Sequence record: OZ196285.1
DNA length: 64,000 bases
Strand: one strand, 5' to 3'
A program made the position numbers and the translations under genes. The notes beneath the pieces were generated by a model. The model had not been told where the DNA came from. It did not search any database and saw only the letters and a list, made by a program, of their open reading frames with translations. Every line of letters begins with the position of its first letter. The first letter of the stretch is position 1. This document shows, piece by piece, positions 55,296 through 63,614 of the stretch.

Positions 55296-55826
55296 TTAGC
55301 GTCCTTTAGTTTTTTTATATTTCGCTTTCTTATTCTTTCGATTAATCTTGCGAACTTCTTTTCGTTTAGCGATTTTATCAGCTCTTCGCACTGCATCGTA
55401 ATCAGCAGCACAAGACGCTGCAAACGCATCAGGCTTGAATACAGGCTCCTGACCTACATAACCCAAGATCGTGCCCTTAGCTTCGTTATACGCAATGCTA
55501 GACTTATGTTTCGGGTCAGGATTGATATCGACGTGAACTTCAAAGCCACGAGGACCGCACATTGGCTTAACGCGCAACGCACATTCACCTGCTTTGTAGA
55601 CTTCATTCATTAGACGACTGCGAATACCGTCAGTCGCGTTCATGTATGCAGGTTCAGTTTCAACCATCTTGAAGACTTGAGCACCTTTACTGCCTTCCAA
55701 GTGAATTATGATTACAGTCGCATAACTGATTAAATCACTCTTTCGCTTACTGTCACATCCGACATAAATCGTGCTGCTCGGGTGACTATTGCATATCGCT
55801 GTTTCTATTGCTTCCCAATCAAACAT
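55296..55826 (-). CDS. RNase H-like YkuK (DUF458) family protein
   Basis: IYVGCDS, RLMNEV, EVHVDIN, FKPDAFAASCAAD. Confidence 0.8.
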   Translation of the reverse strand: MFDWEAIETAICNSHPSSTIYVGCDSKRKSDLISYATVIIIHLEGSKGAQVFKMVETEPAYMNATDGIRSRLMNEVYKAGECALRVKPMCGPRGFEVHVDINPDPKHKSSIAYNEAKGTILGYVGQEPVFKPDAFAASCAADYDAVRRADKIAKRKEVRKINRKNKKAKYKKTKGR

Positions 55827-55870: not shown

Positions 55871-57319
55871 TTATACTGCGTACCGGTCGATACCAACAGT
55901 CTTCATCATGATCTTCACTGGCTCAAGCTCGCCATCAAGTAAAGAAGTCAGGATAGATGGACTACAACCCGACACAAGTGCCGTACCTGCCTCACCCGTT
56001 TTCACTGGTACGTTGTCTAGACGACCGCGAATGTTCCAGAACGCTAGTTGCGGCATTTCGTAGCCCGCTGCTGCGTATTGAGCTTTGATAGCATCAAAGT
56101 TTGTTTCTGTGCGGCTTGGCCAACCACCACCGCATTTCGCAGTGTTGAATTCCATGTCAGACATGATCAACATCTTCGTAGGCATTTCAGATTGTGGCAA
56201 GTTTGCACGCTGCGCACGCTCCAATAGCACTTCGAAACACTTCTGAATATCAGTGCTCATGTTCTCACCAGAACGACGCATGTTAGCAAGACGCGTTGAC
56301 AGTGTATCACCAACAAGCTTGTGGAAATGTGGATCGCCTGAGAACGAAATGAACTGATCTTTGAAGATACCTTCGTTACGTTCAGCTACGTAGACACCAA
56401 GAGACATCGCTACGTCCATACAAGTTGTAACAGTGCCCTGTGAATAGCAGCTACCTTGTTCTGAGTTAATCGCACAATTCATTGAGCCAGACACATCAAC
56501 AACAGGGATGATGCGCTCGTCAGACCCTTCCATGTAATTCGGAAGTGCTTTCCATTGCTGATCTGCTACACGTGAATCGCCCATTCGTACGCTGCGAACA
56601 ACGTCGTAAGGGAAGACTGCACCTGCATTGATCTTAGCTTCGCCTTTCTCAAGCTTGTTGATGTACTCACCGTAGTTCTCAGCCGCGTTACGACCGAATG
56701 CTTTCTGATAACGCGCAGACGCTACAGATGGCAACTTACCGAAGTCGATCTCGTTCCAGTTCTGTGAACACATTTTCTGTTCAACAGTGTCAGACAGCGT
56801 AGAAATGACCTTACGCCATTGCTTCGATGTCACGCCAAGCGCCTTGATAGTGCGCTTAAACACGATACCGTTTTTACTCTTCTCACGAGGGAACCACTTC
56901 GCAGCCAGTGCGTTTTTGCCGTTCACGATTGCATTTGCCCATAGAGCAATTGCATCAGACTCAAGAGGAGTACCGAACGCAGTCACTAAGTCATCGAAAC
57001 GACCTAATTCTGGCACCTTGTGCATTACAGCACGTGCAACGTCAGGGTTTTTCGCGATAAGTTCAGCGAAAATGCGACGGAAAGTACCGCGCTCACCTGC
57101 ACCACCGCGCACGTCGCGAGACCATAGCAAGATACGTGTTGCTAGTTCAGGGTTTTCACCGTATGCGCGATTGAACGCATGTACTGAATCTTTGTTACCG
57201 CGCATTGCTGCTACAGTAAAGAACAAGTTCAGACACTCGTTACCCGAAGTGCTGTGTGTAATTGCACCGTTTGCTGTACGTGCGTCGTTTGTGCTCATTG
57301 CGTTCATAAATGCTGACAT
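55871..57319 (-). CDS. TROVE/Ro60-like vWA protein (DUF2828)
   Basis: TANGA...CLNLFF, RDVRGGAGER, GRFDD, LAAKWFPRE, DVSGSM MIDAS, IMSDMEF; start 57319 with AGAGG RBS. Confidence 0.85.
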   Translation of the reverse strand: MSAFMNAMSTNDARTANGAITHSTSGNECLNLFFTVAAMRGNKDSVHAFNRAYGENPELATRILLWSRDVRGGAGERGTFRRIFAELIAKNPDVARAVMHKVPELGRFDDLVTAFGTPLESDAIALWANAIVNGKNALAAKWFPREKSKNGIVFKRTIKALGVTSKQWRKVISTLSDTVEQKMCSQNWNEIDFGKLPSVASARYQKAFGRNAAENYGEYINKLEKGEAKINAGAVFPYDVVRSVRMGDSRVADQQWKALPNYMEGSDERIIPVVDVSGSMNCAINSEQGSCYSQGTVTTCMDVAMSLGVYVAERNEGIFKDQFISFSGDPHFHKLVGDTLSTRLANMRRSGENMSTDIQKCFEVLLERAQRANLPQSEMPTKMLIMSDMEFNTAKCGGGWPSRTETNFDAIKAQYAAAGYEMPQLAFWNIRGRLDNVPVKTGEAGTALVSGCSPSILTSLLDGELEPVKIMMKTVGIDRYAV

Positions 57320-57395
57320 TGTGTATTTCCTCTTAAATAATATGCTGTAAAATGTCTTATGCGTTGTATTATACACACGTTTTTACGAGTGTAAA
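57315..57395 (-). promoter_or_regulatory. sigma70 promoter and structured leader of TROVE-like gene
   Basis: TTTACA 57395-57390, 16 bp, TG-TATAAT 57373-57368; leader AGACATT-TTACAGCA...AGAGG...AATGTC pairs over the start codon. Confidence 0.7.
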
Positions 57396-57418
57396 CAACA
57401 TTTTCAAGTTTTTTTTAA

Positions 57419-60965: not shown

Positions 60966-61028
60966 GATTTATTCCTCTTTTGTTTTACTCAGCATCGCAC
61001 ATTACGACAGTTTTGTAAACCACAAAAA

Positions 61029-61053
61029 CAAAAAAGCCCCAATTAAGGGGCTT
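61029..61053 (-). terminator. terminator of tRNA operon
   Basis: AAGCCCC-TTAATT-GGGGCTT plus T run on minus strand. Confidence 0.8.
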
Positions 61054-61068
61054 ATTCGTGCAATAATC

Positions 61069-61260
61069 AGACATTCGTGAACAGTTTTAAAGTCTTTCGC
61101 ATAAATCACATTTGACTTTCATGTTTAACGATACATGAATCCCTAACGACGAATCGTCAGTCGTGCCTTCGAGCGTATTGCTTTAAATCACCGAGAAAGC
61201 GGCTATGCGTTGCTCTATTCTTTTAAGTAAGTTTTGTTAGTTGGTTGCAGTACAATGTCT
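61069..61260 (-). ncRNA. structured ncRNA A (Y-RNA-like candidate)
   Basis: Closing stem AGACATT/AATGTCT, GTACTGCAA motif; 45/58 ungapped identity with ncRNA B at 3' end. Confidence 0.7.
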
Positions 61261-61270
61261 TTTGCAAAAT

Positions 61271-61359
61271 TGGCGGAAGCACTGGGAGTCGAACCCAGAG
61301 AACGCTATTAACGTCCGACACCTTAGCAGGGTGCTGTCATACCATTAGACCATGCTTCC
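61271..61359 (-). tRNA. trnS: tRNA-Ser(GCT)
   Basis: Cloverleaf, CT-GCT-AA loop, long variable arm, G73, CCA. Confidence 0.95.
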
Positions 61360-61365
61360 GTAATG

Positions 61366-61442
61366 TGGTGCTCAACCCGAGATTCGAACTCGGACGTTCT
61401 AGTGTTTGAAACTAGTGACTCTGCCAATTGGCCTAGTTGAGC
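61366..61442 (-). tRNA. trnL: tRNA-Leu(CAA), short variable loop
   Basis: TT-CAA-AC loop, A73, CCA. Confidence 0.9.
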
Positions 61443-61448
61443 GATGTT

Positions 61449-61525
61449 TGGTACGCGTGGGCGGATTCGAACCGCCATCCCTGAGATTTTAAGCCTCATG
61501 CCTCTGCCAATTGGACCACACGCGC
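61449..61525 (-). tRNA. trnL: tRNA-Leu(TAA), short variable loop
   Basis: CT-TAA-AA loop, A73, CCA. Confidence 0.9.
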
Positions 61526-61527
61526 AT

Positions 61528-61601
61528 TGGAGCTCGTACAGAGAATCGAACTCTGACCGTGAGATTTGCAATCTCCCATACTACCGTTATACGATACGAG
61601 C
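61528..61601 (-). tRNA. trnC: tRNA-Cys(GCA)
   Basis: TT-GCA-AA loop, U73, CCA. Confidence 0.93.
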
Positions 61602-61616
61602 ATTAAAAATGTACTT

Positions 61617-61693
61617 TGGGGTGACCGACGGGGATCGAACCCGCATCTTCCGGAATCACAACCCGGAGGTATTTCCACTTCACCCACAGCCAC
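61617..61693 (-). tRNA. trnH: tRNA-His(GTG)
   Basis: TT-GTG-AT loop, C73, CCA; genomic -1 base is T. Confidence 0.93.
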
Positions 61694-61785
61694 ACCAAAG
61701 TACACTTCGGGACATATAACGTCTGTCAACCGGACTCATTTACGTGGGTCATTCGAGCAAAGCACAACTTTGCTAGTAAGTTTTC

Positions 61786-62013
61786 TTAACTGAGATAAAT
61801 TCTATCAGGAGAGAGTTCGCGATTAAACATTTTTCTAAAGAAAATTGCAACGTCATCACTAGTGATATTCGACTCGATTTGTTGTGCAAGCTCAAGCACT
61901 TTAACGCGCTTATAGCCTTTACGCCAACAATCAAACATCAATCGATCCATTTGCTTCAATTTCTCGACTTGGTTCGAGTGAACATACTCGTGGGTTTCTA
62001 ATAGCGAACTCAT
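61786..62013 (-). CDS. hypothetical protein in tRNA array
   Basis: 75-aa ORF filling inter-tRNA gap. Confidence 0.6.
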   Translation of the reverse strand: MSSLLETHEYVHSNQVEKLKQMDRLMFDCWRKGYKRVKVLELAQQIESNITSDDVAIFFRKMFNRELSPDRIYLS

Positions 62014-62033
62014 AATAAAAATCTCATAATAAA

Positions 62034-62107
62034 TGGTGTTCCCTAGTGGAGTTGAACCACTGACTCCTCTTTGTAAGAGAGGCGTATTCCCGTTATACTA
62101 AGGGAGC
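62034..62107 (-). tRNA. trnV: tRNA-Val(TAC)
   Basis: CT-TAC-AA loop, A73, CCA. Confidence 0.93.
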
Positions 62108-62112
62108 AGATT

Positions 62113-62188
62113 TGGAACGCGTAACGAGATTCGAACTCGTACTCTCGGTTTGGAAGACCGCAGTGCTACCGTTAAACACCATACGCGC
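62113..62188 (-). tRNA. trnG: tRNA-Gly(TCC)
   Basis: CT-TCC-AA loop, U73, CCA. Confidence 0.93.
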
Positions 62189-62484
62189 ATTGTAAGTTAG
62201 TCAGACGCATTGAACAAGTCTTGAATTGCTTTCAAGTTGGTCAACTCTACTTCAAGTGTTCTTATAAAGAACGGGTTGGTCTCTATTGAGAGACGATATT
62301 CAACATCGCGAATAAATCGACCGATGTTGCCCTTGCTTAGTGTAAAGTAGTCATGCTTCTTTCTCTTCGTTTGAGGTTAGTATTAGATGAACTTGTTCGT
62401 AAACTTCTTGCTCAATCAGCCATTGTTCGTAAACGTAGTCTGCATACAAAAGTGTTTCGTACATACTTCACCTATTTTAAAATG

Positions 62485-62561
62485 TGGTGGTGACTCTGAG
62501 GTTCGAACTCAGTACCAGCGGCGTATGAAACCACGACTTTACCATCATAAGCTAAGTCACC
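62485..62561 (-). tRNA. tRNA with CAT anticodon (elongator Met or Ile2)
   Basis: TT-CAT-AC loop, G1-C72 paired, CCA. Confidence 0.9.
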
Positions 62562-62704
62562 AAAGACGATATTTCTCATTTAATCTGCACACGGGCTAGA
62601 CACCATATTTTAATGGTCTGAGTGAAGAACCTCTGCACAACAATCCCGATCTAATTGCGTTATGTGGTGACTGTCACGAGGAATCGTATCTTCAAATTAG
62701 TATC

Positions 62705-62913
62705 AGGCAATCGCGAAATGTTTTATCGTCTTTTGCATAAATCGCTATTGACTATCTTGTGTATTCTGTACAAGAACATATCACATTTTCGCAAGTGAGG
62801 CTATCATATCATCACTGATATGCACGTCTTGTAATGCTTGAAGTGACACGTTTCCGCTCACCCGCACCAAGAGCCATCTTTGAGTTAGAAAGATTAGTTG
62901 CAGTACATTGCCT
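62705..62913 (-). ncRNA. structured ncRNA B (Y-RNA-like candidate)
   Basis: Closing stem AGGCAAT/ATTGCCT with compensatory changes relative to A; GTACTGCAA motif. Confidence 0.7.
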
Positions 62914-62956
62914 AGCGCACGTTTTAGCCGAAGCAAACGTGAACTCTAATTATGTG

Positions 62957-63032
62957 TGGCACGCCATATAAGATTCGAACTTATAACCCCGAATTTAGAA
63001 GATTCGTGCTCTTCCAATTGAGCTAATAGCGC
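62957..63032 (-). tRNA. trnR: tRNA-Arg(TCT)
   Basis: CT-TCT-AA loop, CCA. Confidence 0.93.
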
Positions 63033-63109
63033 ATCATTAAGAATCGAACCATAAGATCTTGTGACACGATGGTAGTAAAGAGAGTGTCTATCTCATGTGT
63101 TCGAAAATT

Positions 63110-63504: not shown

Positions 63505-63614
63505 TGAGTGTCGTTTATACCGCGTCTCCAAGACCTGAGCTACCAACTCAGCGTGAGATTCGAACTCACAACGTTTCTTGTATCGAAAGAATTTAAAATT
63601 GCTGTAAACACTCA
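63505..63614 (-). ncRNA. structured ncRNA C with circularly permuted tRNA module (YrlA-like architecture)
   Basis: Closing stem TGAGTGT/ACACTCA, TTACAGCAA motif, anticodon-like arm, T-arm GTGAG-TTCGAAT-CTCAC, closed acceptor-like hairpin. Confidence 0.7.

What the first reader, a model, noticed from the sequence alone, without database searches (positions are those of the whole stretch)
61067..62913. ncRNAs A and B are paralogues with covarying helices and a conserved GATTTATGC loop
Seen: 61067-61124 and 62703-62760 align without gaps at 45/58 nt. There are two compensatory pairs in the closing stem and one in the next hairpin (plus strand TTCATGT/ACATGAA versus TCTTGT/ACAAGA). An (AAA/ATA)GTC...GAC stem encloses an invariant GATTTATGC. 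The central 110-130 nt are unrelated. Inference: a second conserved protein- or RNA-binding module specific to this subtype.
Basis: partly seen in the sequence, partly recalled or inferred. Interest (0 to 1): 0.7.

Follow-up and report, generated by a model that had tools for sequence, protein, structure and literature searches.

The report
Phage Y-like RNAs with shared pseudoknot
Two ~200-nt structured RNAs in the tRNA operon of a KVP40-like Vibrio phage are true paralogues, and they appear to be long forms of an undescribed RNA family found next to Ro60-like protein genes in many unrelated phages, so they are probably that protein's partner RNAs.

Summary
Window 61067-61124 and 62703-62760 match 45/58 without gaps, and nothing else in the window reaches 34/58. 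Both RNAs lie on the minus strand of the tRNA operon of Vibrio phage F86, and both are conserved and syntenic in about 12 KVP40-like phages.

The closing stem P1 covaries. The "invariant loop" GATTTATGC is not invariant in homologues. Its GA, plus the two bases before it, pairs with UCNN just 5' of the P1 3' strand (100% paired, three pair types at each of two positions). GUC/GAC can form as well, which gives an H-type pseudoknot stacked on P1.

A and B carry a wider signature: a 7-bp stem, then (U)AC(A/U)GCAA, an A-rich 3' side, and a G. I found this signature in small hairpins and tRNA-like RNAs beside DUF2828 genes in Vibrio, Escherichia, Campylobacter, Listeria, Mycobacterium and Sinorhizobium phages.

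The F86 DUF2828 protein models as Ro60, and its own mRNA leader copies the stem plus motif.

Metatranscriptome contigs show a close homologue of RNA A (in a KVP40 relative) as a discrete, circularly permuted species.

Best reading: these are Y-RNA-like partners of a phage Ro60-like protein, and the pseudoknot is a module specific to the A/B subtype. Protein binding is inferred, not shown.

The parts
61056..61270 (-). ncRNA A, predicted mature species (~215 nt). It starts directly 3' of tRNA-Ser(gct) at 61271-61359 and ends just before the terminator.
   Evidence: The ends are inferred by homology from the KVP40-relative RNA contigs, which run from CCA+2 to 13-14 nt past P1. Synteny and conservation hold in ~12 phages.
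61254..61260 (-). A: P1 5' strand, AGACAUU. It pairs with 61069-61075 (AAUGUCU).
   Evidence: RNAalifold on alignment A1. Covaries against the B copies.
61244..61253 (-). A: family motif GUACUGCAAC, directly 3' of the P1 5' strand.
   Evidence: Conserved in every family member.
61118..61139 (-). A: hairpin UUCAUGU-(loop)-ACAUGAA. With its closing bases the loop reads GUAUCGUUAAAC, which is conserved.
   Evidence: Homologous hairpins in KVP40, nt-1, L041 and 1.081.O have changed stems.
61077..61118 (-). A: pseudoknot module.
- S1: AAGUC 61114-61118 pairs with GACUU 61090-61094.
- S2: GUGA 61106-61109 pairs with UCAC 61077-61080.
- Exposed loop L2: UUUAUGCGAAA 61095-61105.
- A-rich L3: 61081-61089.
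   Evidence: Pair counts, RNAalifold, coordinates.
61030..61051 (-). Intrinsic terminator of the tRNA/ncRNA operon: GCCCC-UUAAUU-GGGGC followed by a U run.
   Evidence: Read directly from the sequence. The equivalent hairpin plus U run follows A in all homologues.
62705..62913 (-). ncRNA B, measured from P1 to P1 (209 nt). It lies between tRNA-Arg(tct) at 62957-63032 and tRNA-Met at 62485-62561.
   Evidence: Syntenic in all KVP40-like phages examined.
62897..62913 (-). B: P1 5' strand AGGCAAU (62907-62913, pairs with 62705-62711) followed by the motif GUACUGCAAC (62897-62906).
62755..62822 (-). B: three covarying hairpins.
- GNRA-capped CAUAUCA/UGAUAUG, 62805-62822.
- UCAC/GUGA, 62781-62798.
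- UCUUGU/ACAAGA, 62755-62775.
   Evidence: RNAalifold on A2 found 17 pairs with changes on both sides. Coordinates.
62713..62754 (-). B: pseudoknot module.
- S1: UAGUC 62750-62754 pairs with GACGA 62726-62730.
- S2: GCGA 62742-62745 pairs with UCGC 62713-62716.
- L2: UUUAUGCAAAA 62731-62741.
- L3: 62717-62725.
63505..63614 (-). Third family member, 'C' (110 nt), between tRNA-Gln and tRNA-Thr. P1 is UGAGUGU/ACACUCA and the motif is UUACAGCAA. It has a T-arm (GUGAG-UUCGAAU-CUCAC) followed by a D-arm-like hairpin (CUGAG-UUGGUAG-CUCAG).
   Evidence: Stem-plus-motif scan. The covariance model built only from other phages' elements scores it 26.6 bits, E=0.0012. Syntenic copies occur in nt-1, 1.081.O and L041.
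55871..57319 (-). Gene for a Ro60-like protein (Pfam DUF2828 + DUF7788; HEAT-repeat ring plus vWA domain), 482 aa.
   Evidence: Pfam scan. AF2 model with pLDDT 82. The seven best Foldseek PDB hits are all Ro60, E from 4e-9 to 4e-5.
57315..57396 (-). Promoter and leader of the Ro60-like gene.
- -35 GUUUAC at 57391-57396 and -10 UAUAAU at 57368-57373.
- Leader AGACAUU-UUACAGCAU at 57342-57357.
- GACAUU (57351-57356) can pair with AAUGUC (57315-57320), which contains the start codon.
   Evidence: R1 scores it 17 bits, E=0.09, but with a different 3' partner for the stem (AGUGUCU at 57231-57237). The same arrangement occurs in six other lineages.

Best explanation
RNAs A and B are stable, structured non-coding RNAs cut out of the phage's tRNA operon transcript.

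They are long forms of an RNA family with a fixed core:
- a 7-bp closing stem (P1) formed by the two ends;
- the single-stranded motif (U)AC(A/U)GCAA directly after the 5' strand;
- an A-rich ...AAAAC stretch before the 3' strand;
- a G after the stem.

This core is the likely docking site for the phage's Ro60-like protein (DUF2828 plus vWA), in the way that canonical Y RNAs present a short 5'-strand motif in their closing stem to Ro60.

The family is modular.

That block is an H-type pseudoknot:
- Helix S2 (NNGA/UCNN) stacks end-to-end on P1.
- Helix S1 ((U/A)AGUC/GAC(G/U)(A/U)) crosses it.
- An 11-nt loop (UUYAWGNNAAA) is left exposed, and the A-rich strand lies along S1.

I infer that the pseudoknot is the effector part specific to the A/B subtype. 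It would either fix the geometry of the docking site or recruit a second factor to the bound protein.

The protein probably also represses its own translation, by binding the copy of stem plus motif in its mRNA leader, which hides the start codon.

**Shown:** paralogy, the helices, the family signature, its position next to Ro60-like genes, and the Ro60 fold of the protein.

**Inferred:** protein binding, autoregulation, and the role of the pseudoknot.
For: **Structure**
- P1 and S2 are predicted independently in both families and both covary.
- For the pseudoknot model, 0 of 500 shuffles reach the observed covariation score, and slid controls collapse.

**Family**
- The stem-plus-motif signature recurs on the tRNA strand in F86, KVP40, nt-1, 1.081.O, D479 and L041.
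- It lies directly beside DUF2828 genes in Felixounavirus, Campylobacter CP30A, Listeria LMLPA3, Mycobacterium Lumos and Sinorhizobium phiM7.
- In 15 minimal elements from these phages, all 7 P1 pairs covary and none is broken.
- A model built from them finds F86 RNA C at E=0.0012 and the Ro-like leader at E=0.09.

**Protein**
- The protein has the Ro60 fold.
- Bas63 gp130, whose authors also describe it as structurally similar to Ro60, lies directly upstream of tRNA genes (PMC11482910).

**Parallel with known Y RNAs**
- YrlA RNAs carry a short 5' motif, lie within 4 kb of Ro60 on the same strand, and at least one per genome is tRNA-like (PMC4201824).

**Leader mimicry**
- Seen in seven lineages. 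In D479, where the Ser codon differs, the stem is relocated to AGAAAU/AUUUCU.

**Expression**
- RNA-library contigs cover exactly the RNA A homologue of a KVP40 relative, at higher depth than the flanking sequence.
Against: - No binding data exist.
- The covariance model of minimal elements does not recover A or B. Their 190-210-nt inserts and the F86 variant ACUGCAA defeat it, so their membership rests on the hand-read signature.
- No Rfam family, including the Y RNA models, matches.
- The motif differs from the canonical Ro60 site.
- A and B (190-270 nt) are larger than characterised Y RNAs.
- 1.081.O RNA A lacks the pseudoknot entirely, so the module is dispensable there.
- The S1 core never varies, so S1 rests on one clade-level change.
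- The leader's 3' strand is partly fixed by the Met-Ser codons.
- The Aeromonas phiAS5 leader and the Felixounavirus leader lack the motif.
Confidence: 0.6

Rival explanations
1. A and B are processing or 'punctuation' structures of the tRNA operon. In this view the stems and the ACAGCAA motif guide a ribonuclease that separates the tRNAs, or they protect transcript ends. The RNAs would be stable by-products with no trans-acting partner, like the functionally unassigned RNA C and RNA D of T4.
For: - All members sit between or after tRNA genes.
- The 5' end of the RNA A homologue in the KVP40 relative lies 2 nt after the CCA of tRNA-Ser.
- T4 has stable RNAs of unknown role at the same map position, after tRNA-Arg(UCU).
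Against: - The same stem plus motif sits in the mRNA leader of the Ro60-like gene, outside any tRNA context.
- In Listeria and Campylobacter phages the elements form their own small cluster right at the Ro60-like gene.
- The strong conservation of a pseudoknot and its loops is more than end protection would need.
- T4 RNA C and RNA D lack the signature.
Confidence: 0.15
2. A (and perhaps B) act chiefly as substrates or decoys of RNA end-joining. The processed ends, held together by the P0/P1 stems, are sealed by a phage RNA ligase into a circle. The circle then resists exonucleases or soaks up a host nuclease or defence factor. The Ro60-like protein would be secondary.
For: - Three RNA-library contigs of 295-297 nt are rotations of a 267-nt circle that equals the RNA A homologue of a KVP40 relative. 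The joint runs from 5950 back to 6219, and the contig ends overlap by 30 nt.
- The ends flank a helix, GCAAUA/UAUUGC.
- KVP40 Rnl2 circularises RNA in vitro (PMC4344496).
- The Listeria phage Ro60-like gene lies beside RtcB and RNA ligase genes.
Against: - The evidence comes from one environmental sample, from assembled contigs only, at depth 5-7.
- A tandem DNA duplication in that phage, or a library artefact, is not excluded.
- There is no signal for B.
- It does not explain the leader mimicry or the family-wide motif.
Confidence: 0.12
3. The conserved pseudoknot is a ligand-sensing (riboswitch-like) or attenuator element that controls termination or downstream expression.
For: It is a compact pseudoknot with highly conserved loop bases. 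In A it lies ~20 nt upstream of a terminator.
Against: - Nothing lies downstream of A in the operon to be regulated.
- In B the same module is followed by other hairpins and a tRNA.
- The module is locked to P1, which is formed with the far 5' end.
- No Rfam riboswitch matches.
Confidence: 0.03
4. The regions encode small proteins, as annotated in the F86 record.
For: The deposited record lists 'hypothetical protein' CDSs over both regions. ORFs of 35-51 codons exist there.
Against: - Substitutions are compensatory across helices.
- Homologues differ by 1- and 2-nt indels inside the most conserved block.
- The KVP40, phi-ST2 and 6E35.1a records annotate nothing there.
Confidence: 0.01

Closest known systems
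Bacterial and phage Y RNAs of the YrlA type, the partners of Ro60/Rsr (Chen et al. 2014, PMC4201824); also Yrl1/Yrl2 of Thermus phage phiLo (PMC12135203)
   Same: - Encoded within a few kb of a Ro60-fold protein gene on the same strand.
- The closing stem is formed by the 5' and 3' ends.
- A short conserved motif sits on or next to the 5' strand.
- Several different RNAs occur per genome.
- At least one has a T-arm followed by a D-arm (RNA C here, and its counterparts in Felixounavirus and Lumos).
- The gene neighbourhood is linked to tRNA and RNA repair.
   Different: - The protein belongs to the DUF2828/DUF7788 family, not Pfam TROVE.
- The motif is (U)ACAGCAA rather than GNCGAAN(0-1)G or GGUCCGA.
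- No Rfam model matches.
- A and B are two to three times longer and carry a pseudoknot not described for Y RNAs.
- The mRNA-leader copy of the site has no described counterpart that I know of (from my own knowledge).
- Binding is untested.
T4 RNA C (species 1) and RNA D (species 2)
   Same: - Small stable RNAs of unknown function in the tRNA cluster of a T4-type phage.
- They come directly after tRNA-Arg(UCU), as B does.
- T4 RNA C ends in a T-arm-like hairpin, as F86 RNA C contains one.
   Different: - No sequence similarity.
- No closing stem followed by ACAGCAA.
- No pseudoknot block.
- As far as I know T4 has no DUF2828 gene (from memory, not tested here).
H-type RNA pseudoknots (for example in frameshift signals and small riboswitch aptamers)
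   Same: Two crossing helices, with an A-rich strand able to lie in the groove of the first helix and one helix stacked on a neighbouring stem.
   Different: - An 11-nt loop separates the two helices where classical examples have 0-1 nt.
- The context is a trans-acting stable RNA, not an mRNA.

Membership tests
Y RNA / YrlA (Ro60 partner RNAs) | Bound by a Ro60-family protein in vivo | not testable with these tools
   Only indirect evidence is available: co-location and leader mimicry.
Y RNA / YrlA (Ro60 partner RNAs) | Encoded near a Ro60-fold gene and on the same strand | tested here: met
   A lies 3.7 kb and B 5.4 kb upstream of the Ro60-like gene on the same strand. In five other phage groups the elements lie within 0-2 kb.
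Y RNA / YrlA (Ro60 partner RNAs) | Closing stem made by the 5' and 3' ends, with a short conserved motif on the 5' side | tested here: met
   P1 covaries. The motif CAGCAA is invariant in the 15 aligned minimal elements.
Y RNA / YrlA (Ro60 partner RNAs) | Canonical Ro60-site sequence (GGUCCGA or GNCGAAN0-1G), or a match to the Rfam Y RNA models | tested here: not met
   No Rfam match even at E up to 10. The motif is different.
Y RNA / YrlA (Ro60 partner RNAs) | tRNA-like domain (T-arm followed by D-arm) | tested here: not met
   Absent from A and B. Present in sibling RNA C at 63505-63614 and in its Felixounavirus and Lumos counterparts.
Stem + ACAGCAA RNA family next to DUF2828 genes (defined here) | A 7-bp stem, NUAC(A/U)GCAA immediately 3' of its 5' strand, an A-rich stretch before the 3' strand, and a G after it | tested here: met
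   A has AGACAUU-GUACUGCAAC ... UAAAAC ... AAUGUCU-G. B has AGGCAAU-GUACUGCAAC ... UAAAAC ... AUUGCCU-G.
Stem + ACAGCAA RNA family next to DUF2828 genes (defined here) | Significant score with a covariance model built from independent members | tested here: not met
   R1 finds RNA C (E=0.0012) and the leader (E=0.09) but not A or B. The model cannot span their long inserts, so the failure is uninformative about homology.
T4 RNA C / RNA D | Sequence or structural similarity to the T4 species 1 or species 2 RNAs | tested here: not met
   I read the T4 sequences and found no shared motif or closing stem. Only the map position is alike.

The most novel reading that the evidence does not exclude
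The Ro60-like DUF2828 proteins encoded by hundreds of phages (711 records in the phage collection) have their own, so far undescribed class of Y-like partner RNAs, recognisable by a covarying stem followed by ACAGCAA.

In KVP40-like phages this class would have three further properties:
- It has diversified into minimal, tRNA-like and pseudoknot-bearing long forms.
- The protein controls its own translation through a leader copy of the site.
- The long form A is joined into a circular RNA after being cut out of the tRNA operon.
Probability: 0.4. Interest if true: 0.85.

Novelty: new variant of a known kind. Interest (0 to 1): 0.75.

Why it matters
Ro60-like proteins are widespread in large lytic phages, and one of them (Bas63 gp130) was reported to counter a bacterial defence system. 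Their RNA partners are unknown, and the authors of that report could only guess that some 'tRNA genes' might be Y RNAs.

A sequence signature that pinpoints candidate partner RNAs in Vibrio, Escherichia, Campylobacter, Listeria, Mycobacterium and Sinorhizobium phages makes the question directly testable. It gives defined RNAs, a defined motif to mutate and a likely autoregulatory site.

It also assigns a function to unannotated or mis-annotated stretches of phage tRNA clusters.

Finally, it raises the possibility of a DNA-encoded circular RNA in a T4-type phage.

Tried and rejected
- **Rfam.** Searches at gathering and at permissive thresholds on the window, RNA C and the Felixounavirus region found only tRNAs.
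- **Single-sequence folding.** Folding energies of A and B are not exceptional (z = -0.65 and -0.98), so thermodynamics alone says nothing.
- **Exact-pattern scans for the pseudoknot block.** The IMG/VR scan returned only KVP40 and VH7D plus chance hits in coding DNA. The JGI metagenome scan returned only chance hits.
- **IMG/VR scan for AAGAC-N4-TACAGCAAA.** It gave 122 matches. Fifteen passed my stem filter. Six of those lie in a conserved coding region and are probably chance. The other nine look genuine: one is in L077 and eight are in the Felixounavirus-like contigs L091, L101, L109 and L143.
- **Covariance model of minimal elements.** It did not recover A or B.
- **A partner for the exposed loop UUUAUGC.** I looked upstream (for example CGCAUA in F86 A) and in the ACAGCAA motif. 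Any pairing is not kept in homologues, so I rejected it (judged by eye).
- **A P0-type extension of P1 in B.** None is consistent across phages.
- **T4 RNA C/D homology.** Rejected.
- **Protein-coding reading.** Rejected because of indels and compensatory changes.
- **Promoter reading of the Felixounavirus elements.** TTGACA overlaps some of them, but this cannot explain the stem covariation.
- **Literature.** Searches found no description of these RNAs. The KVP40 genome paper was not available.
Full report
**Where this is.** The window is part of Vibrio phage F86 (100% identity to OZ196285.1), an outlying KVP40-like Schizotequatrovirus (PMC12028318). The last 3 kb hold 13 tRNA genes, all on the minus strand, so the finding must be read on that strand. 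RNA A (about 61056-61270) follows tRNA-Ser(gct) and is followed by an intrinsic terminator at 61030-61051. RNA B (62705-62913) lies between tRNA-Arg(tct) and tRNA-Met.

**Checking the observation.** The two 58-nt stretches match at 45/58 without gaps. No other 58-mer in the window, on either strand, reaches 34/58, so chance is excluded. Single-sequence folding energies are unremarkable. No Rfam family matches.

**Homologues.** Both RNAs are conserved and syntenic in KVP40, phi-ST2, ValKK3, VH7D, V09, VS1, nt-1, 1.081.O, the D491s and K566 groups, and a metagenomic relative, L041. None of the records I opened annotates them as RNA. The oyster-phage records place 'hypothetical protein' CDSs over them.

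**Structure.**
- RNAalifold, run separately on 11 A and 11 B sequences, predicts the closing stem P1 in both sets. It also predicts a 4-bp helix, NNGA/UCNN, that continues P1 directly.
- I aligned the module from 19 sequences and counted the pairs of a pseudoknot model.
  - S2 is paired in every sequence, with GC/CG/GU at one position and CG/AU/UA at the next.
  - No shuffle reaches the observed covariation score, and sliding the partner by one to three columns destroys the signal.
Its outer pair switches from U-A to A-U in the F86/D491s A clade, where the neighbouring A.G also becomes A-U.
- Both helices can therefore coexist as an H-type pseudoknot.
- The 'loop' sequence differs in most homologues and is GAGUAGAG in L041 A.
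- B also has three further covarying hairpins, one of them GNRA-capped.
- 1.081.O RNA A lacks the whole module.

**A wider family.**
- Directly after the P1 5' strand, A and B carry GUAC(A/U)GCAAC.
- I scanned for a 7-bp stem followed by this motif. The scan found more elements on the tRNA strand:
  - a 110-nt RNA in the window (63505-63614, 'C') with a T-arm followed by a D-arm-like hairpin;
  - 58-87-nt hairpins in KVP40, nt-1, 1.081.O, D479 and L041.
- Their stems differ completely in sequence, but all keep the motif, an A-rich stretch before the 3' strand, and a following G.
- The loose form of this scan has a background of about 9 hits per shuffled window. Weight therefore rests on strand, position and the stricter features.

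**The protein link.**
- The same AGACAUU-UUACAGCA sequence opens the leader of ORF 55871-57319(-), just after a sigma-70-type promoter. Its GACAUU can pair with AAUGUC, which contains the start codon.
- The ORF is a DUF2828 + DUF7788 protein.
- Its AlphaFold model (pLDDT 82) has Ro60 structures as its seven best Foldseek hits in the PDB, over the full length.
- A tblastn search finds homologues in 711 phage records, some annotated 'Ro-like RNA binding protein'.
- The leader copy of the site is kept in VH7D, 1.081.O, L039, L040 and L041. In D479 the second codon differs and the stem is rebuilt a few bases upstream. D485 and CZ01, which have a homing endonuclease inserted upstream, keep UUACAGCA between the ribosome-binding site and the AUG.

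**Across unrelated phages.**
- The stem-plus-motif elements lie immediately beside the DUF2828 gene in E. coli Felixounavirus AYO145A and related IMG/VR contigs.
- The same is true in Campylobacter phage CP30A, Listeria phage LMLPA3, Mycobacterium phage Lumos and Sinorhizobium phage phiM7.
- The Felixounavirus and Lumos sets each include a T-arm/D-arm form.
- In an alignment of 15 minimal elements, all seven P1 pairs covary and none is broken.
- A covariance model built from them, with filters off, ranks F86 RNA C first (E=0.0012) and the leader second (E=0.09). It cannot span the long inserts of A and B.
- Rfam has no match for any of these elements.

**Comparison with known Y RNAs.**
- Chen et al. 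(PMC4201824) describe YrlA RNAs as follows:
  - they lie within 4 kb of Ro60 on the same strand;
  - they carry a short 5' motif (GNCGAAN0-1G) thought to be the Ro60 site;
  - they contain a T-arm/D-arm domain.
- Their survey covered only genomes annotated with a TROVE domain.
- The present family parallels this design with a different motif and a different branch of the protein fold.
- The PhageMaP preprint (PMC11482910) noted that Bas63 gp130 is Ro60-like and lies directly upstream of tRNA genes, and guessed that Y RNAs hide among them.
- I found no paper describing these RNAs.

**Expression.**
- No RNA run holds F86 itself.
- For KVP40, three seawater metatranscriptome libraries from one sample hold 295-297-nt contigs at about 94% identity. 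These contigs cover exactly RNA A, from 2 nt after the CCA of tRNA-Ser to 13-14 nt past P1, upstream of the terminator.
- The three contigs are rotations of one another. Their ends overlap by 30 nt and the joint runs from the 3' end back to the 5' end. This is what a 267-nt circular molecule gives in a k=31 assembly.
- The two ends flank a further helix, P0 (GCAAUA/UAUUGC; GUAAAU/AUUUAC in 1.081.O).
- KVP40 Rnl2 can circularise RNA in vitro (PMC4344496).
- This evidence is suggestive only. It comes from one sample, from contigs rather than reads, at low depth, and a tandem duplication in that phage's DNA is not excluded.

**Verdict.**
- The larger result is that A and B belong to a modular RNA family tied to phage Ro60-like proteins.
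- I put 0.6 on the Y-like partner model as a whole.
- Confidence is about 0.95 that these are structured non-coding RNAs and about 0.85 that they belong to the stem-plus-ACAGCAA family.
- Confidence is much lower (about 0.35) for any specific role of the pseudoknot.

Noticed in passing
window 63505-63614 (-): A third family member, 'C'. It has stem UGAGUGU/ACACUCA, the motif UUACAGCAA, and then a tRNA T-arm directly followed by a D-arm-like hairpin. It sits between tRNA-Gln and tRNA-Thr, and syntenic copies occur in nt-1, 1.081.O and L041. Neither ARAGORN nor Rfam calls it.
   Followed up: partly
L014 5949-6219 (-) (KVP40 RNA A), runs X21-X23: RNA-library contigs of a ~94% relative are circular permutations of exactly RNA A (a 267-nt unit with a 30-nt end overlap). 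This suggests either a circular RNA or a tandem copy.
   Followed up: partly
window 55296-55826 (-): An RNase H-like (PF04308, YkuK-type) gene lies immediately downstream of the Ro60-like gene. The pair is kept in CZ01, 1.081.O, L038, L039 and L041. This protein is a possible second component of the system.
   Followed up: no
window 62918-62941 (-): A hairpin capped by GCUUCGGC lies between tRNA-Arg and RNA B. The same UUCG-capped hairpin is conserved upstream of B in most KVP40-like phages aligned.
   Followed up: no
window ~62565-62650 (-): A conserved block sits just upstream of tRNA-Met: GGUUCUUCACUCAGACCAU...AUGGUGUC...GCCCGUGUGC.GAUUAAAUGAG. It is shared with KVP40, phi-ST2 and D491s. 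It contains a hairpin, and its nature is unknown.
   Followed up: no
L024 628-1218 and L025 625-1218 (phages D485, CZ01): A GIY-YIG homing endonuclease gene is inserted, on the opposite strand, right upstream of the Ro60-like gene. It replaces the promoter and stem of the leader but leaves UUACAGCA between the ribosome-binding site and the AUG.
   Followed up: partly
L162 6016-12584 (Listeria phage LMLPA3): The Ro60-like gene is followed within 6 kb by a phosphohydrolase, an RtcB-type ligase, a 'tRNA amidotransferase' and a second RNA ligase. It is preceded by the tRNA cluster and three stem-plus-ACAGCAA elements. This neighbourhood resembles an RNA-repair locus.
   Followed up: no
L037 ~1233-1550 (Vibrio phage D479): A ~320-nt member with stem AGACAGU/AUUGUCU and motif GUCCAGCAAAC. 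It has many GGAAAUAG-type hairpins and no pseudoknot block, so it is a different long form.
   Followed up: no
window 60966-63100; record OZ196285.1: The deposited F86 annotation lists 15 'hypothetical protein' features across the tRNA/ncRNA region, including over RNA A and RNA B. These look like over-calls.
   Followed up: no
L042 6947-6990 (Felixounavirus AYO145A): The promoter region of the Ro60-like gene holds an 8-bp inverted repeat, GACAGACU...AGUCUGUC. On the opposite strand it reads AGACU-UUAGAGCAAC, which resembles the family signature. Its meaning is unclear.
   Followed up: no
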